A stretch of 44,727 nucleotides of DNA from Vitrella brassicaformis CCMP3155 (lineage: Eukaryota > Protista > Chromerida), in NCBI GenBank assembly GCA_001179505.1, contig CDMY01000602.1:1-44727 (forward strand), written 5' to 3'. The position numbers were made by a program, and so were the translations under genes. The notes beneath the pieces were generated by a model, which worked only from the letters and a program-made list of their open reading frames with translations, made no database searches and was not told the DNA's origin. Shown in pieces: positions 1-44,727 of this stretch (positions are counted from its first letter, which is position 1; every line of letters starts with the position of its first letter).

Positions 1-1470
1 AACACTCTTACTGGGACTTACCGCCCAGCAGATCCTCTATTCAGCTAACTACAGGAAAGGTCCTCACCGGCCTTTTTCGCACACTCTAATGCGTTTCGCG
101 CGGGTGAGGGGAGTCGCGGGTTCGAATCGCAGAGGGGACCTGTATTGAGCTCGCACAGGGCGACTCAGCAGCGCGGGTCAGCTCCCTAGTACAGCTTCCA
201 GACCGCCCGCGGACGCGCGGGCCATCGCTAGTCTGCTTGTTCTGTGCCACGATGCGTGTGACACGCAGGCGCGGCTGCTGCGCGGCACTGAGTATGTGTC
301 AATCAGATGAACGGCGCCGCGATGATGGTTGTCATCTCTCTGTGTGCTGTGCTGTGCTGCAGATGTCTGTCAGTGAGTTGACTGATGAGTGGCTGAGAGA
401 TTGCGGCTGTCGGCGCCCGCCGATTAGCATAGATCAGATGACTGTTTGTCTGTCTGTCTGTCTGCAGGCGTCACAGACTGTCTGACTGAGTGGCTGAGTG
501 GCTGGTTGATGGCTTCGACGCGCCGATGGTGACTATGCGGCCGTCGAGTGGCGCGATGGCCCTCTCCCTCACTGCTGCTCGTCTGTCCGTCTATGTGTGT
601 GTCGAGTCGACGGCCCTCTCTCTCTGTCGTGTGTCTGAGGGGACGGCTGGCGTTTCCTTTTGTGGGCATCTCCCACGCGACTCGGCGACGTCAGAGTATC
701 AGCACACGTCTGGTGCTGGTGCTTTGGGGTTGCTGTGTGGTGACAGAGATGCGCACTAAAGGGAGAAATGGACAGACAGACGCCAGTGTGATTGATGAGT
801 CCATGTCGACACCCACCCACACAAGACTGGATGGATGTATGTGTGTAGGCACTGTCTGCACTTACGGATTTCGTGCGCATCTCTCTCTGTTGGGTGTGGG
901 GTTGCCCGACACACACACGTGGGAAGAAACGGAGGGAGAGATGGGACGTGCGCAAGCGGGAGATGGTTTCCTTTTGATGTGCAGCGTGTGTTGGTGTGCT
1001 GACTGTCAGTTGCTTGTGTGTCACCCGACACATGGAGCTTTCATTCTTCCTCTCTGTGTGTGGTGGCCGTCGAGCGTCTGACAGACAGTCAGACAGAAAA
1101 CTGTGAACGAATGGACAGCACAGTGCGGCTCATTAGGGTGCAAGGGTGTGTGGGTGGGTGTGGTGGTGCGGGTACTATACGCAATCGGCCGTCGACTTGA
1201 TATGTATATGTGAACGATCGACTGACTGACTGACTCACCGCCTCTCTGTTGCCATTTGTATAACCTCCAGCGACACACAGCAGCTCAGCAATCTTGTCCA
1301 CTTGTCCGACTGAGCAGTGCACACACAGACGACGACGACACGAACGCCCAGACGGCCACGTCAACAGATTAAAGACAGCGGGTTCTTTTCATTCCCGAGT
1401 GACTTCCCTGACGGATACAGACTATCATCCAACAACGCTCATGCCATTTTGTGTCGTCTTTTGTGGACCA

Positions 1471-2661
1471 CTAGATGCCATTAAGGACAACATGCACCAT
1501 CCTTACTCCGCCATCCAGTGCATGTGTGTCAATCATGTAGTCGCTCGCCCAGAAGTCAGCCCGTCTACCTGCCCCTCGCTTGCCCTTCTCTTTGCATGTC
1601 TGCATGGCCTCTGGAGGCCAGAGAAGCACTGATGAGCCAGTACACTGACGTCTTTCCCCGTGTCCGTTCACCGCCCCACGGTCCACCAGCACCTTCATGG
1701 GAATGAGATAGAAATAGCGATCACCAGGCACCGAGACGGCCAGCAGATCAAAGTCTCCCTCATCATACAGCTGAGTGGCCTTCGTGCCGGCGCTCTTGTG
1801 CAGAACAACACAAGAAGAGCCGTTGTTGTTGCCGGTGTGAAGACGGGCCTGTTTGTGCTGAATGAGGAATCGCTTCCCATCCCACCACCAGACGGCATCG
1901 ACAGGCGTCATCTCGTAGATGAGCTCCTGCCGGACGGCCACACCAGCAGCAGACAGCAGAGGGGCCCACACCGCAATTGATGCCTCGCCCTTCTGATGCC
2001 TCTCCGACCGCTGCAGCATGATGTTCGCCAGCGAGTCCTTGGTGAATGAGAGGTTCTGATAGACCAACAGCAGCTTCTGCGACAGAGATGCCGGGCCCTC
2101 AAGTGCCGTTGAGCATCGGAAGCTCTCATGGTCCCACTTGCCATTCTCACGCAGAGTGAGTTTCCCAGATGGGATTCGCTGCAGGTCAGATCCGTCGTAG
2201 CACCAGATACGGAAGTCCAACAGAGCCACACAGACGACGGGAATCTCCGGATAATTGTTGGTGAAATTAAATCGCCAGGCGCCGTCCTGGTTCTTCTGCC
2301 TGCACGTCTTCACTTGGACCGGCAGCCACGCATCTTCACTCACACCAAAGGGCCGCACGGCGAGGTCAGCATGTGCCCCCTCTCAGGTCCTCTGCACAAC
2401 AAACCATCGCCTCAGCAGATCCATCACACACTGCACACCCGAGTTGCCGACGAGCCTCCACTCCATCTTCCGCCGGCACTCTGCAGCGGCGGCCTCGGCC
2501 ATTCCTTCATCCTCCCATCGCAGAAGGGCGTCAGCATCAGCAGGCCTTGAAGAAAGTCGTCGAGATGCCGTGGTCAAGGGAGAGAGGGACGCACTGACGG
2601 CGAACCGGCGACGAGAGGCGGAGATGATGATGCCCCTTTGCATTGATGAAGCCACCATCAT
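1471..2661 (-). pseudogene. Intronless PD-(D/E)XK nuclease-like gene (paralog of 33253-34536), interrupted by one in-frame TGA
   Basis: ORFs 2383..2991 and 1471..2358 are in the same frame. Read-through gives DLLRRWFVVQRT*EGAHADLAVRPFGVSEDAWLPVQVKT, colinear with the intact paralog (RTYEMAHADLAVRP). Likely start MMVASSMQRG at 2661 with an Arg/Ser-rich leader. Confidence 0.7.
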
Positions 2662-2788
2662 ACGCCGGCAGAGATGACAAGGCAAATGAAACGGCGAGAA
2701 GCTAGAAGGGACATGGGAAGCACCAGGAGATTTACATTCGAGGTCTGCGAGCTTAGGAGTCCCCCACAGATCTTCGTAATTGAGAGAA

Positions 2789-20708: not shown

Positions 20709-22517
20709 TTGATGCACACAATCCTCTGTCGGCTCTGTCGCTCTGTGCAGGCTGTCGTGGAGCACATCATAGCCACCCAGATGCAGCAACCGCAGCATCA
20801 GCAGCAGGACCCCTTCTCGTATATCTTCGTCGGCCGCCGCACCTTCTACCTCTTCAGCAGCATCAAGGACATCCTGCGGCTGAGGGCCACCTGCACGTGG
20901 ATCAGAGAGCTCTTCAACGCGGCCCAGCTGAGAGATCGGCTCCACCACTCGCTGGGCTCACAGGCGGGGCTGAACAGCTTTGAGAGAGTGGCCGACAAGA
21001 GGGCGAGAGAAATCACTCGAGTCAGTCATCCCTCTCGGCTGCTGCGGTGAGATGGCGGGCCATTGAGCTGACANNNNNNNNNNNNNNNNNNNNNNNNNNN
21101 NNNNNNNNNNNNNNNNNNNNNNNNNNNNNNNNNNNNNNNNNNNNNNNNNNNNNNNNNNNNNNNNNNNNNNNNNNNNNNNNNNNNNNNNNNNNNNNNNNNN
21201 NNNNNNNNNNNNNNNNNNNNNNNNNNNNNNNNNNNNNNNNNNNNNNNNNNNNNNNNNNNNNNNNNNNNNNNNNNNNNNNNNNNNNNNNNNNNNNNNNNNN
21301 NNNNNNNNNNNNNNNNNNNNNNNNNNNNNNNNNNNNNNNNNNNNNNNNNNNNNNNNNNNNNNNNNNNNNNNNNGGGCAGCAAGTGCAGTTGCTGCGGTTC
21401 GACGACGACCAGTTCGGCACACACGATCTGCTGGCGGCTGTGTGTGTGGTGGAGGAGGGGGGTTGGGACGAGATGGCCGAGGTGATTGAGCTGGCGGGGC
21501 AGTGCGGCTGCTGTGACCTGCCTGTCATCCTCACAGCCGATGACATCAACACACACACAAACAAAACGGTGAGCCAGCAAACAGAGGGGCGGGGAGGGGA
21601 GGCAGAGGGCCTGATTCTCTCTGTCTGTCTCTCTGTCTGTGTGTGTGGTCGTGTGTGTAGGCGTATGTGTCGGCTCCCCGTGTGTTGGCGCAGCTCAAGA
21701 TGGTCGGCCGCCACGTCCACTTCAGTGACGACAGCTGCCTGCAGCTGTTTCAACACGGCAATGGTGAGGTGAGGGCCATCAGAGACGAGCCCGACTTCCG
21801 TCTTGAGGTCGACCCGCCCCTCCTCGCCGGCCACCTGTATCGGCAGCACCGACAGCCACACGACCCACCAGTGCGTGAGGGCATCATCTACTCGACCGCC
21901 AACGCCGGATGGGTGTCGGCTGCTTATGGCCTGTACACCCATGCGTCAGTGTCGTCGTTTGCCAAGTTCATAGTCCTCGACCACTTCCGCGAGACTCACC
22001 AGACCAACCGCACATCGATCACACTCAACAGGTGACAACACACCGATGGCACCAGTGGCAAGAGAGGAAAGCCGTTGGTTGTGTGTGTGGTTGGTTCAGG
22101 TATGTTGGTGGCGACCGTCTGGATGACCTGCTGACCGAGTCGCCCCACACACCGGTGGCCGGCTGTACGACCACAGTCAGCTGCGGCGGTGACCGATGGC
22201 TGGTGCTAACCGACAGCAACCACAACTTCGTCGCACGGATTCAGATCCAGCAAGCAGGAAACAACGACGGTTAGAGTGGCAGATTGTTAATGGCCAGATG
22301 TCACGCATTCTTCTTTGCCTTGTGTGCAGTGGATGTGCGTGTCGTGACTACTGAGGCGGCTGTGTGTAGGAGTGGCGCCTTCAAGCACCGCTTCCCGGTG
22401 ACCACTCAGCTGGCTCGCGTGGCGTTGGGGGCGGTGGCGCCATACGTCTTCGACGGACAAGTATACCAGCAGCAGCAGCAGCAGCAGGATGACGACAGCG
22501 ACGATACAATAGAATAA
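20709..22517 (+). CDS. Lineage-specific (Vitrella-type) expanded-family protein, 4 exons, spanning an assembly gap
   Basis: MMHTILCRLC...GQQVQLLRFDDDQFG...NKT|AYVSAPRVLAQLKMVG...TLNR|YVGGDRLDDLL...|VDVRVVTTE...RFPVTTQLARVALGAVAPYVFDGQV, with in-phase GT-AG joins. Confidence 0.65.
21074..21373. other. Assembly gap (300 N)
   Basis: Run of N seen directly. Confidence 1.
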
Positions 22518-23639
22518 GGACACACACATGGATGGATGGATGGATGGATGACGTGCCTTCTCTCTCTCTGTGTGTGAGTGGTCAGCAGATGCCGACGATG
22601 GTGACGATGAGAGCGGCGATATGAATGACGGCAGCGGAGAGGGCGACGGGGGTACACAGTCACACACAGCAAAGAGGTCCTCACGTCGACCTGCATCACA
22701 TGCATGTGTGTGTGTGTCCTGTGCCTTCGACAGGTGACGATGGCGCAGCTGAGGCGGAGAGCGGCGACTGATCGATCCATCAGTCAACACTGGTGGGTGA
22801 GCAGCGATGCACATCCTCTGTTATGCGGCTGAATGTCATCCTGATTGGTGTGTGTGCGTCTGTCATCAGGAGGGTATCTCTTGGGTGCCGGCTGTCGTCA
22901 TCTCTGTAGCCAATCCGTTTGTGGGCAAAACGAATCGCATACCGATCACTTTGTTGACAGACAGACCAGCTGCTGATGGGTGACTGAATGGCTGGCTTGG
23001 CTCTGATGCATGCATCAGTTCAGGGGGTCTATGGCTTGGCCTTTTTGCCCGTGCGTCTCTCTTCCCTGCGTGTAGCCCTCTCTCCCTCCCTCTCCCTCTC
23101 TGTATGTCTGTCTGTAGGAAGAGATATCTGCCCGTCCTCATGGCTGGCTGCCTGTGGGTGTGAGTGGGTGTGGGTGTGGGGGCGGTCATCCTGTCTGCCG
23201 GCCGATTTGGTGTGATGCTCCGGCCGATGTGCGACTGTGTGTGGCTGCCTGGCTGACTCACTCGCCAATGCCGTCTCTCTCTCGATGGCTGTGTGGTGGA
23301 GTTTGTCTGCCTATGTGTGTGAGTGAACTGACATTTGCCTGACCGGCAGCACCTTTCCCTTAATTCTGTGTCTCACACACTCATTCATTGCAATGAAGTC
23401 AGTCACTCGTGCGATTGTGTCTGAGCTGTGGGCGGGCGGACACCTATGGCCAGACCACACACATATCAACGAAAATGAAAAGTACAGAAAAGTACAGGCA
23501 GGTGAACAGCAACCCAGCGGTCCATTCCATCCCATCCCATCCCATCCCATCGCCTCCCCTCCCCTCATCTCATCTCATGGTGGACCCAGCCTCGGCAGTG
23601 GCCCAACGCGACCTGCGTCATGATGCTCCACTGCAACAA

Positions 23640-23830
23640 TTACGAGCGGGTCTCTCTCCTGACATCATGCAGCTTCCCCACCCCGCCATCAGCCGCGTGT
23701 GCATTTACCAAATACTCTTGCCCCGTGGCTCCTCCTGCTGCATTTGTGCACCAGCGTCTCTCCTTGTGTCCATTGACCAGCCTCGTTGCACCAGCACGTC
23801 CATGGCAATGAGGTTGAAGTAGCGGCCACT
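23640..23830 (-). pseudogene. C-terminal fragment of the PD-(D/E)XK-like family
   Basis: GRYFNLIAMDVLVQRG, then -1 shift, VNGHKERR...EYLVNAHAADGGVGKLH. Matches DRYFNLIAMEAPVHRGVVNGHGERR...EYLIDTHADDGGVGRLH of 33253-34536. Confidence 0.75.
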
Positions 23831-25359
23831 GCATCTTCCTGCTCAGGACGATGGCCGCCGGGGAGGGGCGGCCGAGGCGGCAGGCTTGCTTCGCTTCTGC
23901 CTGCCCACTGCAAGCACCACAAACAGACAGACAGACAGACAGTGGAAGGCGCGAGGGGCGGACAGCATCACCATCATCGCCAGAGGCCAGATCAAAGAGC
24001 ACATCCAACCACCTCATGAAGAGAGGGAATGGCATATCCCGGCATTCATGCCTCAGATCCCTCCTGCTGCCTCTGATCTTCGCAGCTTTCGGTGCAGAGA
24101 CCCATTGGCTGGCTGCAGCAGATCGCAATGGATGGCGGCGGCCTGCTGAATGAATGCAGCTGCGGGAGAGCCGTACATAATGATGGCCAGCGGGATAGCC
24201 CCAGGGCTGATGCACGAGGCAGATCATGCTGCGGAGAGGGAAGAAGGCAGTGCGGCAAAGTGGCCCATTCATGGGATGACGACATCTCCTCAGTCGGCCG
24301 CTGCAGAGCTGCATTTCGGCCTCCTGTAATGAATATTTGGCGCCGTTGTCGATCTTTGGCGCACAGCTCGCAATTCCGTGAAACGATCCTTGGGCACTCG
24401 TTGCCGAGTGCATTGAAGACAACTCGTGTGGTTCTGACCCGATTACCTGGAGCGTTGGGTGACAGGGGGACCACGAGATGCCGCCGGATGGATCCTGACC
24501 CTCTTGGCCTGCCCTCCCGACCTCTGAGGTCAGACGCACGAGACGACTGCGGTGATCAGAGCCCGCCCAGTCACAGGCCACTCCTCTCGGGGGGGGTCTG
24601 ACCAGTCCGATGAAAGTGCGCCAGTGCGAGTAATCGGACGGCACAGTGCGGGAGCTGGTGAAGCGGTCCGTTCGCCAGCGATGCCCTCACTATAAACGAA
24701 GTCCAGGACCTGCACCGCCACCCCACACGAGGTGGTGACCTCCCCCTCTCTCTCGGCTACACCGCACCATGAAGGTACACACAGCACAGCAGCCGACACG
24801 ACACTTGAATGCACGAGACCAAACATGTGCTCATGTCGTTGTGTGTGTACTTGCTGCTGATGCAGACTGCCGGCATTGCCAAGGCGACAGGCAGCCGCGG
24901 AATTATGCAGCTCACTCTCAGCTGGTCATCGCCCAAGAAGACCAAGAAGTCCCCCCGCGACCACTGATGGGCAAGGGAGAGAGAGGAAGGGATGGCGATG
25001 TCGCTGAGCCGCTCCCCTGACGAGTCTCGCGACCCCTCCAATCAGCTGACCAACACAACACAACAGCCAACCACTCTGGTGCCACTGGGCACCACCACGT
25101 GACCCCTGCCATGCCATCCATCAGGGCCCTGACTGCATGTGTGCCGTGTATCCTGTGGGCCCTCTGTGAGCGCATGTGTGTGTGTGTGTGTGTGTGTGTC
25201 AGGTCGCCACTGAGGTGTCGGCAGTCGGGCTGTTGGTGAGCGACGTTCATTGCCAAGAGGCAAATCAACCATTGTCATTCAAAGGCATTTATTGGGTGGA
25301 GGGTGTGAATGAGCACTGGTCTATCTTTTGGTGTGGTTGTATGTGATGTGTGTGTGCAG

Positions 25360-26582: not shown

Positions 26583-28639
26583 ATGGGAAGATCGAAAGCT
26601 ACACCTATGGGCTGGATGGGCACATGGTCTCTCCCTGTATGTGTGTTGTGGCGTGGTTTGTTTCAGGGCCTGTTCGATGGGCGCTCCTTTTCCCTATCGG
26701 TCTGCCCGTTCCCATATACGACTAGTCGCCCGACATACATACCGTGCCCCGGGGCCGTCCGAGAGCACATTCATTCAAGAGGTCTTGCGGGCAGCCGCCA
26801 CCGATAACCAGCCAACGACACGTGCGTCGATTGATGACTCCTGCCTGCTATCTGTTCCTGTTGCCATATGGTGTGTTGTGGGCGGTAGACTGTTGGGCAG
26901 CGACTGTTGGGCAGTGGGCAGCGACTGTTGGGTAGCGAGAGAGACTGTCCGCCACCGATGGATGCATCAGCGCAGCACGGCTGCATCTCTGTGCGTCGGG
27001 GTGATCTGATCATTCGACTACCACACCCACCACACTTGCGACGTATTTGTTGTCTGCGAAGCGTTTGCTGCATTTCATATGTACAGTAGGGTGTTTGCCC
27101 TTTGAGACGTAGGGTGAGACAAGCGTCGTTTCATTCGTTGTGTCAGGTGTGTGACGCGTACTGTGTATAATATGAGCGTGTGAACAAGTGTTGCTCGGCA
27201 ACAAACGATTGGTTGCCCCGAAAACAAACAGGCAATCGAATTTTCCGTGGCCAAGGCAGGTACGTGCGTGCTGCTAAATCGACCGCCGCTTCTTTGTGTG
27301 CTTTTTCCGTGAGCCGAAGCGCCAGCACACGGATATCCTCCCCAGCCCAGCCAGCCGTCATTGCATCGTGCTGCCCCGTAGTAGTCGAACTGATGAGTAC
27401 ATGTTGCCATGGACGGATGGTGCGTGCCAGGATGTGATCCACGGCGCAACTATGGCTGGCCTGCCTCCCTGTCTGTCTGTCTGCTGGGATGAACGAACGG
27501 ATGGATGGATGGATGGCGTGACAGAGTGACCGAGAATGCTTGGATGGGTGACCGATGAAGCTGGTTGCTGCCTGTACACTCCACATCACACGATGCGGCG
27601 TCTGTTCATTCACACACAATCCATTCATCCCCTCAGTGGACTCTATTCACTCGTCATTCGTCCATCACACACACACACATACACACACATAACCCGGCTG
27701 GACAGCCACACACGAACACCCACACGCAATACACGCACAAATACACTCACACACACATAGCTGTCCCATCAAGAAGCGCCGAGCCCCCACCGGCTGCACA
27801 GCACCGCACCCGACACGGCCGGCATGCGGCAGACAGAGAGAGAGAGAGAGAGATACAGGCGCACACACGACAGATACATAATACACACCACTCCAACGCA
27901 CACGACACGATATGACCATACACCCACCCCCACGACAGACATTCCATTCAACACACGCATACACACAGCCTGTTCGTTCTGACTTCAACAAAAGGGATTG
28001 GCTCGCAGATCCTCTCCGGCTACCTAGGTAGCTCACGCACACGCACACACGCACACACACACATGCGGTGGGACAGACAGATCTATCACGCCACGGACTC
28101 ACAGAGAGAGACAGAAGACAGCAGCCAGCTGGGAGGCAGGGAGGGGAGTGCACTATACCAGTCAAAAGTACATTCACTGATAGAGACACCGACACACTCA
28201 CACACACACTGTCAGCCTGCCTGCCTGTCTGCCACTTCCCCTGTGTGTGTGTAGACATGTCACGTACGCCAACCAACCAAGAGAAAGGAAGACCTTTCCT
28301 ACGACACCAATCAATCAGGCGCACCCACACCCACAGAAAAACACACCTATACATAACATACAAGGAAAACACCCACACATTGCCATTGCACACACCCACA
28401 CCCACACCCACACCCACACAGCTGGCTGGCGAGACAGTGGCGAGACGACCCCGGCAGCCAGTATGACACCTGGCCATGTAACATATACCGTTGATTGGGC
28501 CATGCATACCGTCAGCCACAAGATGCATTACACACACACACACAGCTGAAACCCCTTCCACCCATCCCTCCCCGCCACCACACACAGCGCTTACACACAC
28601 ATAGGCACGCAGCCAGGAGGGCCTCTGTCTGTCGCTCAA

Positions 28640-30095: not shown

Positions 30096-32880
30096 GCTAC
30101 CGTGCAGAAGAGTCGGTTTAGTTTGTTGGCTGATTTGGCCAGGCACACCTGGGATGAGCTCTGGGACACCGTCTCGCGGTAGGACACGATGGGGTCCGAC
30201 ACGTCGATGTCGATCTGGGCGTACTCCTCCCTCAGGTCCTTGATGCAGATCTCAATGTGCAGATCACCGCAACCTAACAACCAACACAGCGGTGTGTGTG
30301 TGTGTGTGCGTGTGTGTGTCGGTACTTACCTGCGACGATGTGCTCGCCGGATTCCTCAGTTGTGCAGACGACGAGCGGGTCCGACTTGGAGAGGCGCCTG
30401 AGGCCCTCAACCAGCTTGGGAAGCTCCTTTGGGTCTTTGGGCTTGACGGCCACGCGCACCACAGGCGACACGCTGTACTTCATGTCGGTGACGTTGTGCG
30501 CCTGATCCCATGTGGTGATCGTCCCCGACTTGAGAAGGTACCTATTGTGCGTCATCCATCGAGACGGCCAGGTGTCTGTGGGTGTCTGTCTGTCTGTGTG
30601 TGGGGTGTTTGCTGGCCTACTGGTCGACTCCGACAAGGGCGACTGTATTGCCGCACGGAACATCCTCCACCTGTCCATCAGCATAACACATAACATGTGT
30701 CACCGCGTCTCGTCTACTTGTGTATGTGTGTGGCTGACCCTGTGGAATTTGTTGCCCATCATGAGCACAGTTCGCTGAATGTTTTTGACCGTCACGTCCT
30801 CCTTGCCGCCCGGCACGTAGTGCGGCCCCTGGATGCGCACCTTCTGGCCCGTCGCAATCGTGCCCGAAAACACCCGACCGAACGCATAGAAGCGGCCCTT
30901 CTCGTTGGCTGGCACCATCTTAGACACGTACATCATCAAGGGGCCGTTCGGGTCACAATTCCTGCACACACACACACACACACACACACATGGATGCACC
31001 CACCCCTCCGCCACCCTCTGTGTGTGTGTGTGTGTGTGTGTGCGGACTACCTGATGGCGTTGGCGGCTTCGTCGTCCATAGGCCCCTCATAGAGGCTGGC
31101 CACGCGGTACCGCTGCGCCTCGACTGGCGAGGGCAGGTGCGCGACGATCATGTTGAGCAGTGTGTCGCCCGCACTGAGCCACTCCTGCATCACACACTTC
31201 AGCAACGCCTTGCCCGTCTTCTCCTTGTCGGCCGCTGCATATCACACACACACACAGGGAGGGAGGGAGGGAGGGCTTAAGGTGAGGAGGGTACAGTCGG
31301 GTGCGGTGTGATGTGATACATACCTTTGAGGACGACCCCCATGTTCTCGAGGAACTTGGTGTACTTCTCCTTGTCGTCAGTCATGATACTGGTGGGTGCC
31401 GCCGGATCACACACGCACACACACACACACACAGAGGGAGAGAGAGAGAGAGAGGAGTTGCTGGCCTGCCTGTGTTGCGCATTTGATCAGGAAGACGCCT
31501 ACCTGGTGAAGACTTGGCAGATGGGGTCCATAATGAGCTCACAGAATCCGCGGCGGCTCTCATTGTCGGCAGTCCTGGACCACCTCTTTGTCCGGGGATT
31601 GAAGTAGTTGTCGCCCCACAAACGCTGTAATACGCACACACATGCTGGTCGTGGGCTGCTCCTCTGATCACTGCCTGCCTGCCTGCCTACCTGCATCATC
31701 TTGTCCTTCTCGACGCCGTACTTTTTGGCGTAGATCCTGGCGAACACGTCAATCGTGAAGGCCCACCCCTGCAGACCTGACCCAAAGCTCACGGTACCCT
31801 GCCACACACACACACACACGTGGTGGGTCGGTTGTTTGGTCGGGGTGTGTGTGTGTGTGTGTGCGTGTGTGTGTTGTACAGACCTGCTCAGGGTAGATCT
31901 GGGCGTCGCCCATGAAATCATCATTGTAGGTGGCGATGACCACATTGACGCTCTCTATCGCACGCTTAAACTTCTGCACAACACACACACACACACACAC
32001 ACAGGGAGGCGTTCAGCCAACAGTCGTGTGCTTGCTTGTGCCCCCGCTCCACTGCCCCATTGCCTGCCTGTCTGCCTGCCTGTACGTGTGTGCGGCCTTC
32101 AGATACCTGGTAGATGTCCTCTCCGTCCATCTGCAGCTCGAGGATTGCCCTGTCGACCTTGTTGACGTGCAGCACCGGGCGGACCCGCTCCTGCAGTGCC
32201 TGACGCAGCACCGTCTCGGTCTGGGCGCAGACGCCCTCAACGGTGTCCACCACCACCAACGCACCGTCCGTCACACGCAACGCCGCCGTCACCTCGGACG
32301 AAAAATCCACGTGGCCCGGCGAGTCGATCAAACTGCTCACATGGATGGCAAACACACACACACACACACATGGATGGATGGATGTGCTGTCTTGAGACTC
32401 ACGTGTGTGGCTGTGCTGTGTGTGTATAGTTTACTTGATGAGGAACGGCTGTTGGCCCTTGTCGTCCTCCAAGTCCGCCTCGAAGTAGAGTGAGATGCCG
32501 GTTGACTTGATGGTGATGCACCGCTCCTGCTCGTCCTGTCGGACGTCGGTGAAGCGGACGTCGCCAGCCGCCCTCGACGCGATGATGCCGGCCTTGCTCA
32601 CCAAAGAGTCGGTGAGGGTCGACTTGCCGTGGTCAACACTGATGATTGAGGCAGCACAACAGTGGTCATCATGATTCTGTGTGTGTGTGTGTGTGTGGAT
32701 GGCTGGCTGCCTGCGTTGGTGGTTTCCTTACTGTGCGATGACAGACAGGCAGCGAACGTTCTTGGGCCTGTCCATGATCTCCCTAATCTGATCCACTGTG
32801 AAGTTCACCTAAACACACGTCATGCAGAGAGAGGTGATTGACACAATGTGTGTGTGTGTGTTGGCAAGAGAGCTTACCAT
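28640..32880 (-). CDS. EEF2: Eukaryotic elongation factor 2, divergent, about 18 exons
   Basis: ATG|gtaag at 32880; [12 protein letters not shown]...[15 protein letters not shown]...[12 protein letters not shown]; [24 protein letters not shown]; [13 protein letters not shown]; HRGGGQ; ends LDNFLDKL* at 28640. Confidence 0.97.
30962..31050 (-). repeat. Representative intron with complementary (CA)n 5' and (TG)n 3' microsatellites
   Basis: Sense strand: gtagtccg(ca)~11...atccat(gt/tg)~13cag. The same architecture occurs in many USO1, SET, EEF2 and KARI introns. Confidence 0.9.
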
Positions 32881-33252
32881 CGTCACTGGTGCGCAGGGAT
32901 CACAAGCACAGTCGACAAAAAACAGACGAGAAAAGACGAGTGCTACTGTCGCGGTTATGCAAGCTCTTCTCTCGACAAAACGACAAAGACAGAAGCCAAG
33001 ATGGGACAGAACGGCAAAAAAAAACGCGATCTCTCTCTCCTGTCATGTCTAAGCTCGCACTCATTTGCCGATCGCTTTTTGTCCAGGCCTTTTCCCATTG
33101 CAGGTGCGTCAGGGGGCGGCCAGGCTTGCTCATCTGAACAGTAGTGGTGCGGGGTCTTGAACTTCACACCCTGGTCCTCGTCTCGTAAATCTCGCCTCTC
33201 CCAGGATCTCTCCAAACTATTCGACTCGACTCTGAAGACTCCCGCCTCCAGC

Positions 33253-34536
33253 ATGCCCCTCTCGCGTCGCTTCTCGTCGTGGCGCCTGTCTTCTCATCTC
33301 CATCGGCGAGTGGTGGCTGTCTTGCCGACGCAAGCGGGCGTCGCTTCCGCCTCTCGCCATCAATATCTGCTGGGTTCCTACCGGTTTACTGCGCTCGGCG
33401 CCAGCACGGCCCTCCCTCTCTTCACCACTCCATTGCAGCAGCAGCAGCAGCAGCACCGCCGCCTCTTCACAAGCACCGACCATGACGTCCTCTTGCAGCG
33501 GTGGCAGAAGAGGCAACGGAGGCTCATCAGCAACTCGGGTGTGCAGTGTGTGATGGATCTGCTGAGGCGACGGTTTGTTGTAGAGAGGACCTATGAGATG
33601 GCCCATGCGGACCTCGCTGTCCGGCCCTTTGGTGTGGGTGAAGATCTGTGGCTACCGGTGCAAGTCAAGACATGCGGGGAGAAGACCAACTACGGCTTTT
33701 GGTTCTTTAATGGTGTTCACCAATATCCCGGCATGGCGGTCGTCTGTGTGGCTCTTTCGGACTTCCGCATCTGGTGCTACAGCGGATCCATACTGCAGCA
33801 GAGGGGTGGATGTGGGAAACTCACTGTGTGTGAGAATGGCAAGTGGGACCATGAGAGCTTCCGGTGCTCCACAGAGCTTGATGGGCCGGCATCTCTGTCG
33901 CACAAGCTGCTGCTGGCCTATCAGGACCGTTTCTTCATCAAGGACTCGCTGACGAATGTCACGAAGCGGCGCACAGAGACCAGCCGGAAGGGCGAGGCAT
34001 CCATTGCCGCGTGGGCCCCGCTGCTGTATGCTGCTGGTGTGGAGGTCCGTCAGGAGCTCATCTACGAGAGCACACCTGTTGATTCCGTCTGGCGGTGGAA
34101 TGGGAAGAAATTCCTCATTCAGCACAAACTGGCGCCCCTTCACTCCGGCAACAACAACGGCTCATATTGCGTCGTTCTTCGCAAGGGCGCCGGCAAGAAA
34201 GAAGGGCGCCGCATCTTTCAGCTGTACGATGGGGATGACTTTGATTTGCTCGCCGTCTCGCTGCCTGGTGATCGCTACTTCAATCTCATTGCCATGGAGG
34301 CGCCGGTGCACCGGGGGGTGGTGAACGGACACGGGGAGAGACGTCAGTGCACGAGCGCAACAGTTATGTTATGGACCCCAGAGGCAGAGGCCATGCAGAG
34401 AGTCAGGGAGGAGAAGCGAGGCAGGGGCGGCAGGGCTGACTTTTGGGCGAATGAGTATCTGATTGACACACATGCAGATGATGGCGGGGTGGGGAGGCTG
34501 CATGCTATCCTTGAGGGTGCCAAATGCTCGACATGA
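33253..34536 (+). CDS. Intronless tandem PD-(D/E)XK nuclease-fold protein with predicted mitochondrial presequence
   Basis: Open 427-aa frame from MPLSRRFSSWRLSS. Motifs ADLAVRP..WLPVQVKT, PVDSVW..FLIQHK and YDGDDFDLLAV..YFNLI. Confidence 0.75.
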   Translation: MPLSRRFSSWRLSSHLHRRVVAVLPTQAGVASASRHQYLLGSYRFTALGASTALPLFTTPLQQQQQQHRRLFTSTDHDVLLQRWQKRQRRLISNSGVQCVMDLLRRRFVVERTYEMAHADLAVRPFGVGEDLWLPVQVKTCGEKTNYGFWFFNGVHQYPGMAVVCVALSDFRIWCYSGSILQQRGGCGKLTVCENGKWDHESFRCSTELDGPASLSHKLLLAYQDRFFIKDSLTNVTKRRTETSRKGEASIAAWAPLLYAAGVEVRQELIYESTPVDSVWRWNGKKFLIQHKLAPLHSGNNNGSYCVVLRKGAGKKEGRRIFQLYDGDDFDLLAVSLPGDRYFNLIAMEAPVHRGVVNGHGERRQCTSATVMLWTPEAEAMQRVREEKRGRGGRADFWANEYLIDTHADDGGVGRLHAILEGAKCST

Positions 34537-39101: not shown

Positions 39102-41054
39102 CCATCCGGACACCCGGCCGCGTGTGTGGGTGTGTGTGTGGGTGTGAGGTATTTGTTGCACTGTTGGGTGTGGCTGATCCATTGGATGTGCACGGGGAGG
39201 GCGTTTTAGATGAGATGGATGTGTGGAGGTTTTACATGTGTGCATGGGTGTGAATGTGTGTGCGTGTTGGCAGATACAGACTCACAGACATACTGACGAC
39301 CTATGTAGCATTCAGACAATATGAATATAGGCCGACAGAGAATACATTGACTGAGTTATCTGTCGGCGAATCTGTCTGTACGGCACGAGCCCGTCCATCA
39401 TGCACCCTTTCATCCACTCCTTCACATGCACACACATCAGGGATGCTTTGCTATCACATCCCGCCCTGCATGCACCATTCTCTCCCTCTCCCTCCCTACC
39501 ATGCTCCATCTTTCAATGTGAGCAGGCAGTCCACACATCACACACAGCCACAGCGACAAAGAGACCATTTGAGCAAACACACGTGTGCTCATTCACACCC
39601 CTCCACCCAACACACGCCTTGGCCTGACAGTGGATGCCTTGCCTGTCGGCAATCGATGTCACTCACTAACAGCCCGACTGCCGACACCTCAGTGGCGACC
39701 TGACACACACAAAAATGCGCTCAAGAAGGGCCCACAGCACACAGGGCACTCATGCAGTGGCCTGATGGATGGCATGGCAGAGGTCACGTGGTGGTGCCCA
39801 GTGGCACCAGAGTGGTTGGCTGTTGTGTTGTGTTGGTCGGCTGATTGGAGGGGTCGCGAGACTCGTCAGGGGAGCGGCTCACCGACATCGCCATCCCTTC
39901 CTCTCTCTCCCTTGCCCATCAGTGGTCGCGGGGGGACTTCTTGGCGGCCGTGGGCGATGACCAGCTGAGAGTGAGCTGCATAATTCCGCGGCTGCCTGTC
40001 GCCTTGGCAATGCCGGCAGTCTGCATCAACGGCAAGTACACACACACTGACATGAGCACTGTTTGGTCTCATGCATTCTTTCATGTCGGCTGCCGTGCTG
40101 TGTGTACCTTCATGGTGCGGTGTAGCCGAGAGAGAGGGGGAGGTCACCACCTCGTGTGGGGTGGCGGTGCAGGTCCTGGGCTTCGTTTATAGTGAGGGCA
40201 TCGCTGGCGAACGGACCGCTTCACCAGCTCCCGCACTGTGCCGTCCGGTTACTCGCACTCGCGCACTTTCATCGGACCGGTCAGACCCCCCAGAGGGAGT
40301 GGCCTGTGACTGGGCGGGCTCTGATCACCGCAGTCGTCTCGTGCGTCTGACCTCACAGGTCGGGAGGGCAGGCGAAGAGGGTCAGGATGCCATCCGGTGG
40401 CATCTGGTGCCCCCCTCTCACCTAACGCTCCATGTAGTCGGGTCAGAATCACACGAGTTCTCTTCAACGCACTCGGCAACGAGTGCCCAAGGATCGTTTC
40501 ACGGAATTGCGAGCTGTGCGCGAAAGGATCGACAAGTGACGCCAAATATTCATTACAGGAGGCCGAAATGCAGCTCTGCAGCGGCCGACTGAGGAGAGGT
40601 CGTCATCCCATGAATGGGCCACTTTGCCGCACTGCCTTCTCCCCTCTCCGCAGCATGATCGGCTTCATGCGTCACCCTGGGGCTATCCCGCTGGCCATCA
40701 TTGTGTACGGCTCTCCCGCAGCTGCATTCATTCAGCAGGCCGCCGCCATCGATTGCGATCTGCTGCAGTCAGCCAATGGGTCTCTGCACCGACAGAGACT
40801 GCCAAGTGGCAGCAGGGAGGGATCTGAGGCATGAAAAGACATGCCATTCCCTCTCTAAATGAGGTGGGCGGATGTGCTCTTTGGTCTGGCCTCTGGCGAT
40901 GATGTTGATGCTGTCCGCCCCTCGCGGCTTCCACTGTCGGTCTGTCTGTCTGTCTGTCTGTCTGTTTGTGGTGCTTGCAGTGGGCACGCACTGCCAGAAG
41001 CGAAGCAAGCCGCCGCCTCCCCGACGGCCATCGTCCTGAGCAGGAAGATGAAAT

Positions 41055-41230
41055 ATTGGTCGCTACCTCTACCTCATTGCCTTGGCGGTGCTGGTGCGAC
41101 GAGGGCTGGTGAATGGACACAAGGAGAGACGTCGGTGGACAAAGGCAGCAGGAGGAAAAGACCCACGGGGAAAGAGTATTTGGTACATGCACATGCGGCT
41201 GATGGCGGGGTGGGGATGCTGCATGTCTCA
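41055..41230 (+). pseudogene. C-terminal fragment of the PD-(D/E)XK-like family (twin of 23640-23830)
   Basis: GRYLYLIALAVLVRRGLVNGHKERR, then a shift, EYLVHAHAADGGVGMLH. Confidence 0.75.
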
Positions 41231-42474
41231 AAAGAGCGACCAGACGCAGGTCGCCTTGGGCCGCTCCACTGGCCCAGGCCGACAGATAAATGCGATGGTG
41301 ATGATTGCGAGGAATGACGGTGGTGCAGACGGAGGGAGAATCGGGAGGGCAGAGAAGCATCTGGGTCCACCATGAGATGAGATGAGATGAGATGAGATGA
41401 GGGGAGGGGATGGGATGGACCGCTGGGTCGGAGTTCACCTGCCTGTACTCTTCTGCACTTTTCATTTTCGTTGATATGTGTGTGGTGTGGCCGGCCATAG
41501 GTGTCCGTCCGCCCACAGCTTAGACATAATCGCACGAGTGACTGACTTCGTTGCCGTGAATGAGTGGGACAGACACAGAATTAAGGGAAAGGTGCTGCCG
41601 GTCAGGCAAATGTCAGTTCACTCACACAGATAGGCAGACAAACTCCACCACACACACAGCCATCGAGAGAAAGGAGCATTGGCCAGTGAGTCAGCCAGGC
41701 AGCCACACATCACATCAGAATCGGCGAGCATCGGAGAGCGCGAGATGCACTCACGCACAGCCACACCCACAGGCAGCCAGCCAGCCATGAGGACGGGCAG
41801 ATACATATCCACACAGGCAGACGGAGGGAGGGAGGGAGGGAGGGATTGTTACACAGAGGGACGCACGGGCAAAAGACGAAGTCATAGCCCGACTGACGCA
41901 TGCATCAGAGGCATGGAACTCCTCACCACACATCACAGCCAAGCCAGCCATTCGGTCACATATCAGCAGCTGGTCTGTCTGTCGACAGACCGAGTGGTGT
42001 AATCGTCTTGCACCGACACAGATCACTACCGAGATGACGACAGCCGGCACCCAACATATACCCTTCTGATGACACACACACACGCACACCAGTCAGGGCA
42101 ACATTCAAGTGAATGACAGAGGGACGTCCGTCGCTGCGCACCTACCAGTGTTGATGGATGGATGGATGGATCGATCGATCGATCAGCCGCCGCTCTCCGC
42201 CTCAGCTACGGCATCCTCACCTGCCGAGTGCACCACACATACACAGACATGGATTTGATGGCCTCTGTGGTGTGGTGTGTGTGGCTGTGTACCTCCGTCG
42301 CCCTCTCCGCTGCCGTCATCCACATCGTCACCCTCATCGCCATTCTCATCGTCGGAATCTGCAGACCACACAGACACAGAGAAGGCACGTCTTCCATCCA
42401 TCCATCCATGTGTGTGTGCGTCTGTCAGTACCATCGTCGCCATCGTCATCATCCTGCTGCTGCTGCTGCTATTG

Positions 42475-43851
42475 TTATACTTGTCCGTCTAAGACGTATG
42501 GCGCCACCGCCCCCAACGCCACACGACCCAGCTGAGTGGTCAACGGGAAGCGGTGCTTGAAGGCACCACTACCACACACAGCCGCCTCAGTCGTGTAGAC
42601 ACTAACCCAGACTGCACACAAGGGGACGGAGAACACTGATGACATTGACATGCAGAGCTCCCTCTCTGTGACTTTGACCGGTGTTGTTCGCTTATCTGGT
42701 GATGCAAATCCATGCGACGAAGGGATGACTGCTGTTGGTCAGCACCAGCCGTCGCTCATCACCGTGCAGCCCGAGTGTCGTGGTGCAGCCGGCCACTGGT
42801 GTATGGGGCGACTCGGTCAGCAGGTCATTCAGACGGCCGCCACCGACGTACCTGAACCGACCACAGGCGCACACACAGTCAACAGCGCATCTCTGTCAGC
42901 TTTAGTGCCATTGATGTGTTCTCACCTGTTGAGTGCGATCGACATCTCATTGGTCTGGTGAGTCTCGCCGAAGTGGGTGAGGACCATGTACTTGGCCAAC
43001 GACGACAGTGACGCGTCGGTGAACGGGCCATCACCGGTCGACGACCATCCACTGTCCTCGGGCGAGTAGAGGATGCTGCTGCGCACCGGTGGGTCGTGTG
43101 GCTGTCGGTGCTGCAGGAACAGGTGGTTGGCAGGGAGGGGCGGGTCGACCTCCAGCCGGAAGCCGGGCTCGTCTTTGATGGCCCGCACCTCACCATTGTG
43201 CTGGAACAGCTGGAGGCAGCTGCCGACACCGAAGTGGATGTGGTGGCCGACCATCTTGAGCTGCGCCAACACACGGGGAGCCGACACATACGCCTACACA
43301 CACGACCACACACACACAGACAGCGAGAATGAGGCCCTCTCCCTCCCCTCCCCGCCCCTCTCTTTGCTGGCTCACCGTTTTTTTGTGTGTGTGTTGATGT
43401 CATCGGCTGTGAGGATGACAGGCAGGTCACAGCTGCCGCACTGCCCCGCCAGCTCAATCACCACGCCGATCTCCACCCAGCCCCCCTCCTCCACCACACA
43501 CACAGCCGCCAGCAGATCATGTGTGCCGAACTGGTCGTCGTCGAACCGCAGCAGCTGCACTTGCTGCCCATTCACCGCCCGCCGCAGCCCCGCCTGTGAG
43601 CCCAGCGAGTGGCAGAGCCGATCTCTCAGCTGTGCCGCTCCGAAGAGCTCTCTGATCCACGTGCAGGTGGCCCTCAGCCGCAGGATGTCCTTGATGCTGC
43701 TGAAGAGGTAGAAGGTGCGGCGGCCGACGAAGATATACGAGAAGGGGTGCTGCTGCTGCTGCTGCTCTGGTGGCTGCATCTGGGTGGCTATGATGTGCTC
43801 GACGACAGCCTGCACAGATCGACAGAGCCGACAGAGGATCGTGTGCATCAA
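42475..43851 (-). pseudogene. Disrupted copy of the lineage-specific family gene
   Basis: Same exons as 20709-22517, but exon 1 ends 1 nt short in an A-run (phase shift) and exon 3 has a premature TAA (WICITR*, 42692). Confidence 0.7.
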
Positions 43852-44727
43852 GCATGCTGCTCATTGATCTGTGTGCTGCTCACCTCGTTCGATGCTCAGA
43901 GGGACAGATCAGCAGGCAGAGAACTGAATGCACCACCACCACCACCAGCAGCAGCAGCAGCAGCGGCAGATGAGGAGGCCGCCATCACTCCTCAACGACA
44001 CGCCTGCTGCGATGGGCCGACAGACAGAGAGAGAGATGCCGACAGAAAAGGACGGCGAACGCATTGAGGCCAATGGATCAGTGAGCGCCTCAGTGAGTCA
44101 GTCAGTGAGTGGTCGGCCTCCCTCACCTCTGTTTGGCTGTCAGCTCAAATGGCCCGCCATCTCACCGCAGCAGCCGAGAGGGACGACTGACTCGAGTGAT
44201 TCCTCTCGCCCTCTTGTCGGCCGAGTGCGGCACTCTCGCAAACGCACAGCTATCCGACAAGGCGGACAAAAAAATGGCCTCCCTCTCTCTCGTGGGGTTA
44301 AAGGGTAATAAACCCTTTGACCTGACCCGTCTCCTCGTCAAGCCCCCAGGCCCATTGACCCTTTGACCCCCTGCTTTCGTGTAGACATCCGGCCGTGCGG
44401 CCACGTGTGTGCGTGTTGTGTTGAGGTATTTGTTGGACTATTGGGTGCAGTGTTTGGGTGTGCGTGTGCGTGTGGCGGCATATACAGACAGACAGACAGA
44501 GAGACCCGTGTATGCATACATTTGTGCCGGAAGCGAGAGTGCACTCATTGATTGATTCATCGATTCATCTGTCTACCTGAGAGTCAGCCCGTCCATCAGT
44601 CAAGCACACCGACACCCACTCCCGCCCACCCACCCTCCCTACCACAGATACCCCCCATGATTGAGTTGGTGATTTCTCGGCTGTTTCTCCTCCTTTTCGG
44701 ATGAGCGAGCGTGTATCGGACTACACC

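What the first reader, a model, noticed from the sequence alone, without database searches (positions are those of the whole stretch)
33253..34536. Intronless, organelle-targeted tandem PD-(D/E)XK (homing-endonuclease-like) family
Seen: no introns in a genome where neighbouring genes have 6-25 exons. The N-terminus is Arg/Ser-rich and acid-poor (MPLSRRFSSWRLSSHLHRR). There are two D...QxK motifs (ADL..VQVK; PVD..IQHK) plus a YxxxDFDLLAV..YFxLI tail. Established: that tail pattern resembles the PDDEXK_5/I-Ssp6803I-type endonucleases, and myzozoan mitochondria have fragmented genomes and rRNAs handled by nuclear-encoded factors such as RAP proteins. Inference: a horizontally acquired or retroposed nuclease family retargeted to the mitochondrion. 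It has four copies or fragments in this window.
Basis: partly seen in the sequence, partly recalled or inferred. Interest (0 to 1): 0.75.

Follow-up and report, generated by a model that had tools for sequence, protein, structure and literature searches.

The report
Giant-virus-type double restriction-fold nuclease gene
This intronless nuclear gene of the alga Vitrella brassicaformis encodes a protein made of two restriction-enzyme-like domains from an unnamed family otherwise found mostly in giant viruses. The alga's copy has an organelle-import-like leader where the viral proteins have a zinc finger, and most sister copies in the genome were broken recently.

Summary
Window 33253-34536 (+) is an intact 427-codon ORF with an acid-free, Arg/Ser-rich leader, two D...QxK motifs and the Y..DFD..YF.LI tail.

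The genome is Vitrella brassicaformis CCMP3155. A confident AlphaFold model (pLDDT 83) shows two PD-(D/E)XK domains:
- Domain 2 (aa 240-427) superposes on the whole homing endonuclease I-Ssp6803I (Z 14.6).
- Domain 1 (aa 83-226) resembles the SPARDA DREN nuclease and Hjc (Z 8-9).

Pfam does not recognise the protein. An exhaustive profile search found 615 relatives. Most are about 380 aa, come from giant-virus (Nucleocytoviricota) contigs and carry an N-terminal zinc module. The named eukaryotic members are from Vitrella, Chromera and Alphamonas, and all have a basic, acid-poor leader instead.

Vitrella has at least 11 loci. Only about three are intact; five full-length copies each carry one independent stop or frameshift. 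Core dN/dS of 0.3-0.5 points to long constraint followed by recent decay.

The window's "four copies" are one intact gene, one copy with a single TGA, and one old remnant duplicated within a 5-kb inverted segmental duplication.

Mitochondrial targeting, expression in Vitrella and nuclease activity remain untested, and retroposition has no support. This scan reached the same reading on a paralog elsewhere in the genome (s1-205618).

The parts
33253..34536 (+). Intact intronless ORF of 427 codons plus stop. It is the only undamaged family copy in this window.
   Evidence: no stops, 100% self match; identical to the annotated 427-aa protein P0001
33253..33480 (+). Leader, aa 1-76. It is disordered, Arg/Ser/Ala/Leu-rich and has no Asp or Glu, which resembles a mitochondrial presequence. 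It is poorly constrained in sequence (dN/dS 0.5-1.0).
   Evidence: pLDDT below 50 for aa 1-60; composition; dN/dS
33499..33957 (+). Domain 1, aa 83-235, with a PD-(D/E)XK fold. It keeps D120 (33610-33612), D131, W133, Q137 (33661-33663) and K139 (33667-33669). The helix-1 Glu that 61 of 68 viral-type relatives keep is Ser93 here.
   Evidence: (SPARDA DREN Z 9.4, NhoI 9.0, Hjc 8.2)
33970..34533 (+). Domain 2, aa 240-427, I-Ssp6803I-like PD-(D/E)XK domain. Conserved residues are E248, D277 (34081-34083), Q290 (34120-34122), K292 (34126-34128), Y325, D329 and D331, plus a conserved C-terminal W398/D405 tail.
   Evidence: profile against 2OST, E 3.9e-7; against MepB, 1.5e-7; 2ost_A Z 14.6, rmsd 2.8, 146 of 148 residues aligned
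1462..2703 (-). Full-length paralog, 60% aa and 79% nt identity, disabled by one internal TGA at 2383-2385. Paralogs have Trp or Tyr at that codon. The open frame continues upstream to 2991.
23661..23824 (-). Short degenerate remnant of the C-terminal part (matches aa 341-419). It lies inside the left arm of the inverted segmental duplication.
41061..41150 (+). The same remnant in the right arm of the inverted segmental duplication (matches aa 341-370).

Best explanation
The ORF is a real, intact nuclear gene of Vitrella brassicaformis. It encodes a two-domain PD-(D/E)XK (restriction-fold) nuclease from an unnamed family whose closest full-length relatives are giant-virus proteins.

**Shown**
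- Both domains have the restriction-endonuclease fold and keep a D...QxK motif, the same variant as in the aligned part of I-Ssp6803I.
- Domain 2 matches I-Ssp6803I over its whole length.
- The eukaryotic members (Vitrella, Chromera, Alphamonas and some marine transcripts) lack the viral N-terminal zinc module. They carry a basic, acid-poor, disordered leader instead.
- The Vitrella family was kept open by selection for most of its history, and most copies were then knocked out by single recent lesions.

**Inferred**
- The protein is a Mg2+-dependent DNA endonuclease.
- Domain 2 (E248/D277/Q290/K292) is the cutting unit. Domain 1, which has lost the helix-1 Glu, mainly positions or supports it. 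This would put in one chain the 'active plus structural' subunit pairs described for the I-Ssp6803I and SPARDA DREN tetramers.
- The leader sends the protein to an organelle, most likely the mitochondrion, where it would cut or resolve organellar DNA.
- The gene probably entered a chrompodellid ancestor from a giant virus, with the DNA-binding zinc module swapped for the leader.

**My odds for the separate steps**
- Fold and family identity: about 0.95.
- Common descent with the giant-virus proteins: about 0.9.
- Direction virus to host: about 0.6.
- Catalytically active: about 0.6.
- Organelle import: about 0.5.
For: **Real gene under constraint**
- Core dN/dS is 0.28-0.50 among close paralogs and 0.12-0.25 against the C666 copy.
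- Indels in the core are almost all multiples of three.
- Neutral drift to the observed divergence would give about 5.5 stops per copy, with P(at most 1) = 0.02. Five copies each have at most one internal stop.

**Fold**
- The AlphaFold model built on 85 sequences has pLDDT 83.4 and pTM 0.79.
- Foldseek's top hit is I-Ssp6803I at E 3.5e-7.
- VIA gives Z 14.6 for domain 2, and Z 9.4, 9.0 and 8.2 for domain 1 against DREN, NhoI and Hjc.
- The family profile hits the 2OST sequence at E 3.9e-7 and MepB at 1.5e-7.
- 19 of 85 relatives hit Pfam PDDEXK_5 and 10 hit MepB-like.
- hhalign of domain 1 against domain 2 gives E 2.4e-5.
- The motif residues are at least 90% conserved.

**Viral link**
- There are 615 relatives.
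- Contexts L021, L022 and L024 carry giant-virus-type gene sets.
- BFVD hits are Aureococcus anophagefferens virus, Klosneuvirus and Hyperionvirus at E 1e-14 to 1e-16 over both domains.
- Three Nucleocytoviricota clusters in the ESM Atlas match at TM 0.70-0.75.

**Leader**
- Eukaryote-type members have 0-1 (a few up to 3) acidic and 2-8 Arg residues in the first 40 aa. Viral-type members have a median of 6 acidic and 1 Arg.
- Alphamonas members are complete ORFs from a transcriptome.

**Active plus structural precedent**
- Described in PMC3384342 and bioRxiv 10.1101/2025.04.08.647717.
Against:
- No targeting predictor was available. Arg- and Ala-rich leaders partly reflect the GC-rich genome, and an Arg-rich N-terminus could also be a nuclear or nucleolar signal.
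- Most paralogs are broken, as expected for a dispensable or selfish gene.
- Pfam does not recognise this protein at all.
- Domain 1 lacks the helix-1 Glu.
- The (D/E) of the canonical motif is Gln in both domains, so activity is not certain.
- The tree is unrooted, and GC-rich and AT-rich sequences may group by composition.
- The self-association job gave no verdict.
Confidence: 0.55

Rival explanations
1. A selfish or leftover gene family of viral origin with no host function. Free-standing homing-endonuclease-like genes were brought in by giant-virus DNA, spread by local and segmental duplication, and are now decaying. This copy is simply the last one not yet hit, and the leader is not a working signal.
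For: - The gene is intronless in an intron-rich genome.
- There are at least 11 loci, only about 3 of them intact, each broken copy with its own lesion.
- Copies cluster on contigs C602 and C302.
- Relatives carry swappable homing-endonuclease-type DNA-binding modules: zinc ribbon, NUMOD1 and AP2.
- The leader has dN/dS of 0.5-1.0.
Against: - The ORF was under long-term purifying selection.
- The region's GC content is like the host's, and no viral genes lie next to it.
- The family is kept in three chrompodellid genera, with expressed complete ORFs in Alphamonas.
- The acid-free leader composition is maintained in all of them despite sequence turnover.
Confidence: 0.2
2. A nuclear-acting nuclease, for example in DNA repair or in defence against infecting giant viruses or other foreign DNA. 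The Arg-rich N-terminus would then be a nuclear or nucleolar localisation signal rather than a presequence.
For: - The leader is very Arg-rich (RR and HRR clusters).
- Domain 1 resembles the DREN nuclease of the SPARDA defence system.
- Birth-and-death evolution with many pseudogenes is typical of defence gene families.
Against: Acid-free stretches of 40-75 residues rich in Ser, Ala and Leu, with no Lys, look more like presequences than classical nuclear signals. Nothing else points to defence.
Confidence: 0.15
3. A catalytically dead restriction-fold protein that only binds nucleic acid in an organelle, in the way RAP or FASTK-type domains serve RNA metabolism.
For: - Gln replaces the acidic residue of the (D/E)xK motif in both domains, and Ser93 replaces the helix-1 Glu in domain 1.
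- At least one Vitrella paralog (P0096/L013) has lost the motifs altogether.
Against: - In the aligned part of its sequence, the active enzyme I-Ssp6803I shows the same D...QxK variant.
- D, Q and K are at least 90% conserved in both domains over 85 very divergent sequences, which argues for catalysis.
- Pfam gave no hit at all, so no match to RAP.
Confidence: 0.1

Closest known systems
I-Ssp6803I (PDB 2OST), the PD-(D/E)XK homing endonuclease of Synechocystis; Pfam PDDEXK_5 (PF11645)
   Same: - Domain 2 superposes on the whole enzyme: Z 14.6, rmsd 2.8 A, 146 of 148 residues.
- The family profile finds its sequence at E 3.9e-7.
- Both have the D...QxK motif and the Y..D.D...FY.IP tail.
   Different: - I-Ssp6803I is a single domain of about 150 aa. 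It works as a homotetramer and is encoded inside a group I intron (PMC3384342).
- This protein has two fused, diverged domains and an N-terminal leader, and it is a free-standing nuclear gene.
- It scores nothing against PF11645.
Uncharacterised two-domain proteins of giant viruses (Aureococcus anophagefferens virus A0A076FH51, Klosneuvirus A0A1V0SIJ8, Hyperionvirus A0A3G5A8P9, and hundreds of metagenomic Nucleocytoviricota proteins)
   Same: They share the tandem architecture over the full core, with 327-371 aligned columns at E 1e-14 to 1e-16 and TM 0.70-0.75. They have the same conserved residues in both domains.
   Different: - The viral proteins start with a Cys/His zinc module of about 90 aa and have acidic N-termini. 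The Vitrella protein has an acid-free leader.
- Sequence identity is 14-22%.
- The viral proteins keep the helix-1 Glu of domain 1.
DREN (DUF4365) nuclease domain of SPARDA short-Argonaute defence systems
   Same: Domain 1 aligns at Z 8.3-9.4. DREN, like I-Ssp6803I, acts in a tetramer of two active and two structural domains (bioRxiv 10.1101/2025.04.08.647717). That suggests how a fused pair of domains could divide the work.
   Different: There is no APAZ or Argonaute partner and no bacterial context. The similarity is at fold level only, at 15% identity.
MepB (PDB 4LQE; Pfam MepB-like PF08877)
   Same: The family profile hits it at E 1.5e-7 and domain 2 aligns at Z 11.0. 10 of 85 relatives hit the Pfam model.
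   Different: MepB is a bacterial single-domain protein. I know of no established function for it (from memory).
Archaeal Hjc and bacterial RecU Holliday-junction resolvases
   Same: Both domains align at Z 7-8.6. These enzymes work as dimers of the same fold.
   Different: The match is much weaker than to I-Ssp6803I. No junction-specific features were tested.

Membership tests
PD-(D/E)XK (restriction endonuclease-like) superfamily | Alpha-beta-beta-beta-alpha-beta core fold | tested here: met
   A confident model (pLDDT above 90 over aa 90-360). Both domains match many solved PD-(D/E)XK enzymes.
PD-(D/E)XK (restriction endonuclease-like) superfamily | Catalytic D ... (D/E)xK motif on strands 2 and 3 | tested here: inconclusive
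   Both domains have D...QxK (D120/Q137/K139 and D277/Q290/K292), at least 90% conserved. Gln replaces the acid, as in the aligned part of I-Ssp6803I. The helix-1 Glu is present in domain 2 (E248) but is Ser93 in domain 1.
PD-(D/E)XK (restriction endonuclease-like) superfamily | Metal-dependent phosphodiester cleavage | not testable with these tools
   Needs recombinant protein.
Pfam PDDEXK_5 (PF11645) / I-Ssp6803I family | Score at or above Pfam's gathering cut-off (26.1 bits) | tested here: not met
   No Pfam hit for this protein even at E up to 10. The relatives P0044, P0008 and P0020 score 19.7-23.8 bits. 19 of 85 relatives match at E up to 0.01, the best at 2.5e-6.
Pfam PDDEXK_5 (PF11645) / I-Ssp6803I family | Full-length structural and profile similarity to I-Ssp6803I | tested here: met
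   Z 14.6 over 146 of 148 residues; profile E 3.9e-7.
Homing endonuclease (functional class) | Encoded within a group I/II intron or intein, or free-standing next to its target in a mobile context | tested here: not met
   This is a free-standing nuclear ORF between host EF2-like and thioredoxin-domain genes. No repeat or element surrounds it, and homology among copies stops at the ORF borders.
Homing endonuclease (functional class) | Long, specific DNA target and gene-conversion spread | not testable with these tools
   No target can be inferred from sequence.
Giant-virus tandem PD-(D/E)XK family (unnamed) | Two-domain core alignable end to end | tested here: met
Giant-virus tandem PD-(D/E)XK family (unnamed) | N-terminal Cys/His zinc module (CGH ... 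C..C) | tested here: not met
   Present in 58 of 68 viral-type rows. Absent from all Vitrella, Chromera and Alphamonas rows.
Mitochondrial presequence-bearing proteins | N-terminal 20-60 residues rich in Arg, Ser, Ala and Leu with no acidic residues | tested here: met
   The first D/E is at residue 76, with 9 Arg and 0 Lys in aa 1-75 and P about 1e-4. The same make-up is seen in paralogs and in Chromera and Alphamonas members.
Mitochondrial presequence-bearing proteins | Positive call by a trained predictor, or an observed localisation | not testable with these tools
   TargetP and MitoFates were not available, and no localisation data were found.
RAP / FASTK-type organellar RNA-binding proteins | Match to the RAP domain model | tested here: not met
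   Pfam gave no hit of any kind for this protein.

The most novel reading that the evidence does not exclude
A giant-virus nuclease was captured by the common ancestor of chromerids and colpodellids. It was stripped of its zinc-finger DNA-binding module, given a mitochondrial presequence and put to work on organellar DNA. As a single chain that combines the 'active' and 'structural' subunits of an I-Ssp6803I-like tetramer, it would make or resolve the breaks that drive recombination in the fragmented mitochondrial genomes of these algae.
Probability: 0.15. Interest if true: 0.8.

Novelty: new variant of a known kind. Interest (0 to 1): 0.5.

Why it matters
The fold is ordinary, but three things are not:
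- The architecture is two fused I-Ssp6803I-like domains.
- The family is unnamed yet large, with 615 relatives, most of the listed ones giant-virus-like.
- It appears in chrompodellid nuclear genomes with an import-like leader.

If the leader works, this would be a clear case of a giant-virus gene rebuilt into an organellar factor in the closest photosynthetic relatives of apicomplexans. It would also be a candidate enzyme for the poorly understood upkeep of their fragmented mitochondrial DNA.

The tandem layout offers a natural test of the 'two active plus two structural subunits' model proposed for I-Ssp6803I and SPARDA. The many single-hit pseudogenes also warn that the public gene models for this family, which bridge lesions with invented introns, are unreliable.

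Tried and rejected
- **Read evidence.** There is therefore no read-level evidence on expression or on the reality of the lesions. The runs that hold the stretch are of unknown kind, so I draw nothing from them.
- **First structure model.** The first AlphaFold run, on 8 paralogs, was too poor to use (pLDDT 48). It was replaced by the 85-sequence model.
- **Family libraries.** Pfam and NCBIfam gave no hits, and the PDB sequence search with the single protein found nothing. PHROGs gave only phrog_5018, of unknown function, at E 4e-6 on aa 243-350.
- **Word-based search.** The search with the eukaryote-type alignment A3 returned only proteins already known. It adds nothing on the family's range in eukaryotes.
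- **Self-association.** Complex prediction with two copies of aa 80-427 gave no verdict. This is neither for nor against dimerisation.
- **Original I-Ssp6803I paper.** PMC1864971 is not held. The roles I give its catalytic residues rest on the alignment and on memory.
- **Retroposition.** Rejected as unsupported: there is no A-rich tract after the stop and no flanking homology among copies.
- **Recent viral insertion.** Rejected: the GC content is like the genome's and the neighbours are intron-bearing host genes.
- **Bacterial promoter and terminator scan**. Irrelevant to a eukaryote and ignored.
- **Metatranscriptome-like contigs.** By eye, I saw no dinoflagellate spliced leader at the 5' ends of L025 and L026. 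That leader sequence is from memory.
- **Literature.** Searches found no description of this family.
Full report
**1. What is in the sequence**

Window 33253-34536 (+) is an uninterrupted ATG-to-stop ORF of 427 codons. It is identical to an annotated 427-aa protein of the same contig. The genome is Vitrella brassicaformis CCMP3155: the paralogs carry that name in NCBI and UniRef, and the assembly is 72.7 Mb in 1064 contigs.

- The first acidic residue is number 76. Residues 1-75 hold 9 Arg, no Lys and 17 Ser+Thr. With the D/E frequency of the rest of the protein (11.4%), the chance of such a run is about 1e-4.
- The two D...QxK motifs are D120/Q137/K139 and D277/Q290/K292.
- The tail is Y325..D329.D331 ... 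Y342-F-x-L-I.

The region's GC content (0.58) matches the rest of the window.

The neighbours are host genes cut into exon-sized pieces. An EF2-like gene lies on the minus strand at about 29.4-32.4 kb, head to head with this ORF. A thioredoxin-domain exon lies at about 35.7-35.9 kb.

**2. The copies**

tblastn finds four matches in the window:
- The intact gene.
- A full-length copy at 1462-2703 (-), with 60% aa identity.
- Two short C-terminal pieces at 23661-23824 (-) and 41061-41150 (+).

The two short pieces lie in the two arms of a 5-kb inverted segmental duplication (20253-25316 against 44322-39585, 79-90% identity). They therefore represent one old remnant copied once.

The 1462-2703 copy has a single internal TGA at 2383-2385. 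Paralogs have Trp or Tyr at that codon.

Genome-wide there are at least 11 loci. DNA homology between loci is confined to the ORF, and no A-rich tract follows the stop.

Each of the five close full-length paralogs has its own lesion:

| Locus | Lesion |
|---|---|
| C302 (115 kb) | TAA at codon 353 |
| C602 (copy 2) | TGA at codon 114 |
| C391 | TAG at codon 310 |
| C658 | TAG at codon 201, plus small frameshifts |
| C302 (68 kb) | 2-nt deletion at nt 916 |

Almost all other indels in the core are multiples of three.

Intact members are this gene, the 408-aa ORF on C666 and P0007. P0096/L013 is open but has lost the motifs.

Core dN/dS is 0.28-0.50 among close paralogs and 0.12-0.25 against the C666 copy. 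The leader runs at 0.5-1.0. A simple neutral simulation gives about 5.5 in-frame stops at 12.5% per-lineage divergence, with P(at most 1) = 0.02 per copy.

So the ORFs were held open by selection for most of their divergence and were broken only recently. The alternative is that the lesions are assembly errors, which I could not check.

The public gene models of broken copies bridge the lesions. P0002, for example, lacks the segment around the domain 2 QxK.

**3. What the protein is**

Pfam and NCBIfam gave no hits, and a single-sequence PDB search gave nothing. PHROGs gave one family of unknown function on aa 243-350.

An exhaustive HMMER search with the paralog profile found 615 relatives, 190 of them at E of 1e-10 or better. 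With 85 of these as the alignment, AlphaFold gave a confident model: pLDDT 83.4, pTM 0.79, with aa 1-60 disordered.

Structure and profile comparisons:
- Foldseek's best PDB hit is the homing endonuclease I-Ssp6803I, at E 3.5e-7.
- VIA aligns aa 240-427 to the whole of 2ost_A (Z 14.6, rmsd 2.8 A, 146 of 148 residues) and to MepB (Z 11.0).
- VIA aligns aa 83-226 to the SPARDA DREN nuclease (Z 9.4), NhoI (9.0), and Hjc and RecU (7-8.6).
- The family profile finds the sequences of MepB (E 1.5e-7) and I-Ssp6803I (E 3.9e-7). The D, QxK and Y..D.D..FY.IP motifs line up.
- 19 of 85 relatives touch Pfam PDDEXK_5 and 10 touch MepB-like.
- The two domains are related to each other (hhalign E 2.4e-5, probability 75%).

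Across 85 sequences with 17% mean identity, D120, W133, Q137, K139, D277, Q290, K292 and Y325 are at least 90% conserved.

There is one difference in the Vitrella clade. The helix-1 Glu of domain 1, present in 61 of 68 viral-type rows, is Ser93 here. Domain 2 keeps its Glu at E248.

**4. Who else has it**

Named members are from three sources:
- Vitrella.
- Chromera velia, often as long proteins with 3-5 matched stretches. UniRef labels one of them DUF4365.
- Alphamonas edax, as complete ORFs from a transcriptome.

Most of the 150 relatives listed by the search are AT-rich proteins of about 380 aa with an N-terminal Cys/His module.

Their contigs look like giant viruses:
- L021 carries SNF2 with an intein, NUDIX, Erv1/Alr and DnaJ.
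- L022 is a 156-kb contig with UDG, dUTPase, a kinase and RING proteins.
- L024 carries an mRNA cap methyltransferase, thymidylate synthase, dCMP deaminase and NMT.

Named viruses confirm this. Aureococcus anophagefferens virus, Klosneuvirus and Hyperionvirus proteins match over both domains at E 1e-14 to 1e-16. The three nearest ESM Atlas clusters by structure are Nucleocytoviricota, at TM 0.70-0.75 over aa 80-421.

A few relatives carry NUMOD1 or AP2 modules instead of the zinc module. This is the modular style of homing endonucleases.

In a quick maximum-likelihood tree, the eukaryote-type rows sit on one side of a branch with 97% SH-aLRT support, opposite the viral-type rows, and each genus forms its own cluster. 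Those rows are Vitrella, Chromera, Alphamonas and some GC-rich sequences from short, transcript-like marine contigs. The tree is unrooted and the two sides differ strongly in composition, so the direction of transfer is not shown. The much wider viral distribution makes a virus-to-host transfer the simpler reading.

**5. The leader**

Eukaryote-type members mostly have 0-1 acidic residues (a few up to 3) and 2-8 Arg in the first 40 residues. With one exception, the first D/E falls at position 21-80. The 56 viral-type proteins have a median of 6 acidic residues and 1 Arg, with the first D/E at position 7.

The make-up is kept across three genera while the sequence itself drifts, which is the behaviour of a targeting peptide.

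No clear signal-peptide-like hydrophobic core precedes it. By the crude hydropathy proxy used, a bipartite plastid leader looks less likely than a mitochondrial presequence.

This is composition only. No trained predictor and no localisation data were available, and an Arg-rich N-terminus could be a nuclear signal.

**6. How it most likely works**

*Shown:* a two-domain restriction-fold protein with conserved D...QxK in both domains, the second domain being a full I-Ssp6803I look-alike.

*From the literature:* I-Ssp6803I is a tetramer in which two subunits bind and cut DNA and two hold them in place (PMC3384342). SPARDA DREN domains form the same kind of tetramer of active and structural domains (bioRxiv 10.1101/2025.04.08.647717).

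*Inferred:*
- The fused pair encodes an active domain (domain 2) and a supporting domain (domain 1, which has lost one acidic residue in Vitrella).
- A dimer of the protein would rebuild the tetramer-like cutting unit.
- After import, the enzyme would cut or resolve organellar DNA.

The self-association job gave no verdict.

**7. Rivals**

- A selfish, decaying viral leftover fits the pseudogenes and the clustering. It fits less well with long-term constraint, host-like composition, retention in three genera and the conserved leader make-up.
- A nuclear defence or repair nuclease is not excluded.
- A dead, nucleic-acid-binding fold is unlikely given the conserved triads.

**8. Novelty and earlier work**

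I found no paper on this family, and Pfam has no model for it. The scan's own notes show that a follow-up on a paralog elsewhere in this genome reached the same reading (s1-205618). I saw that note after forming mine.

Another note reports a nuclear LAGLIDADG gene with a mitochondrial-type leader in the same genome (s1-235861). I did not test it. It hints at a wider theme of nuclear, leader-bearing homing-endonuclease-like genes in Vitrella.

**9. Limits**

Expression in Vitrella and the reality of the lesions are therefore untested. Those places were kept out of all later searches.
- Only the best 150 of the 615 relatives were seen, so absence from other alveolates is not established.

Noticed in passing
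window 20253-25316 and 39585-44322: A 5-kb inverted segmental duplication with arms 79-90% identical. It carries the two short nuclease remnants and a repeated Ser/Thr/Pro-rich ORF piece (21.4-21.9 kb minus; 43.3-43.6 kb plus).
   Followed up: partly
window 21074-21373: An assembly gap of 300 N, which lies inside the left arm of the inverted duplication.
   Followed up: no
window, throughout (e.g. 31749-32000, 27665-28639): Many (CA)n/(TG)n microsatellites, apparently in introns and spacers. They give long spurious ORFs that read THTHTH or CVCVCV.
   Followed up: no
window 32400-33252: The nuclease ORF lies head to head with the EF2-like gene. The EF2-like exon piece nearest the ORF (31966-32367, minus strand) encodes part of the GTP-binding domain and is under 900 bp from the ORF's start. 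The two genes may share a promoter region. Places 32501-32538 were left alone.
   Followed up: no
L006 (G000:C302:67956-69165) and protein P0002: The public gene model of a frameshifted paralog skips the damaged stretch, so the model lacks the QxK of domain 2. Other models (P0003-P0006) are truncated around lesions in the same way.
   Followed up: partly
L013 (G000:C317:21569-22102), protein P0096: A divergent open paralog (27% identity) that has lost the D...QxK motifs. It is possibly a non-catalytic offshoot.
   Followed up: no
Chromera velia proteins P0008-P0012, P0015-P0018, P0021: Chromera members are 650-1044 aa long with 3-5 matched stretches. They are either true multi-repeat nucleases or fused gene models of tandem copies.
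   Followed up: no
relatives in alignment A2, e.g. P0083: Single relatives carry an AP2 domain, or NUMOD1 / I-HmuI-type DNA-binding modules, in place of the zinc module. This is the modular build typical of homing endonucleases.
   Followed up: no
L025, L026, L027: GC-rich relatives (P0014, P0022) sit on 1.2-kb contigs that hold only the ORF with short flanks, from marine samples. They look like transcripts of unidentified eukaryotes near the Vitrella clade.
   Followed up: partly
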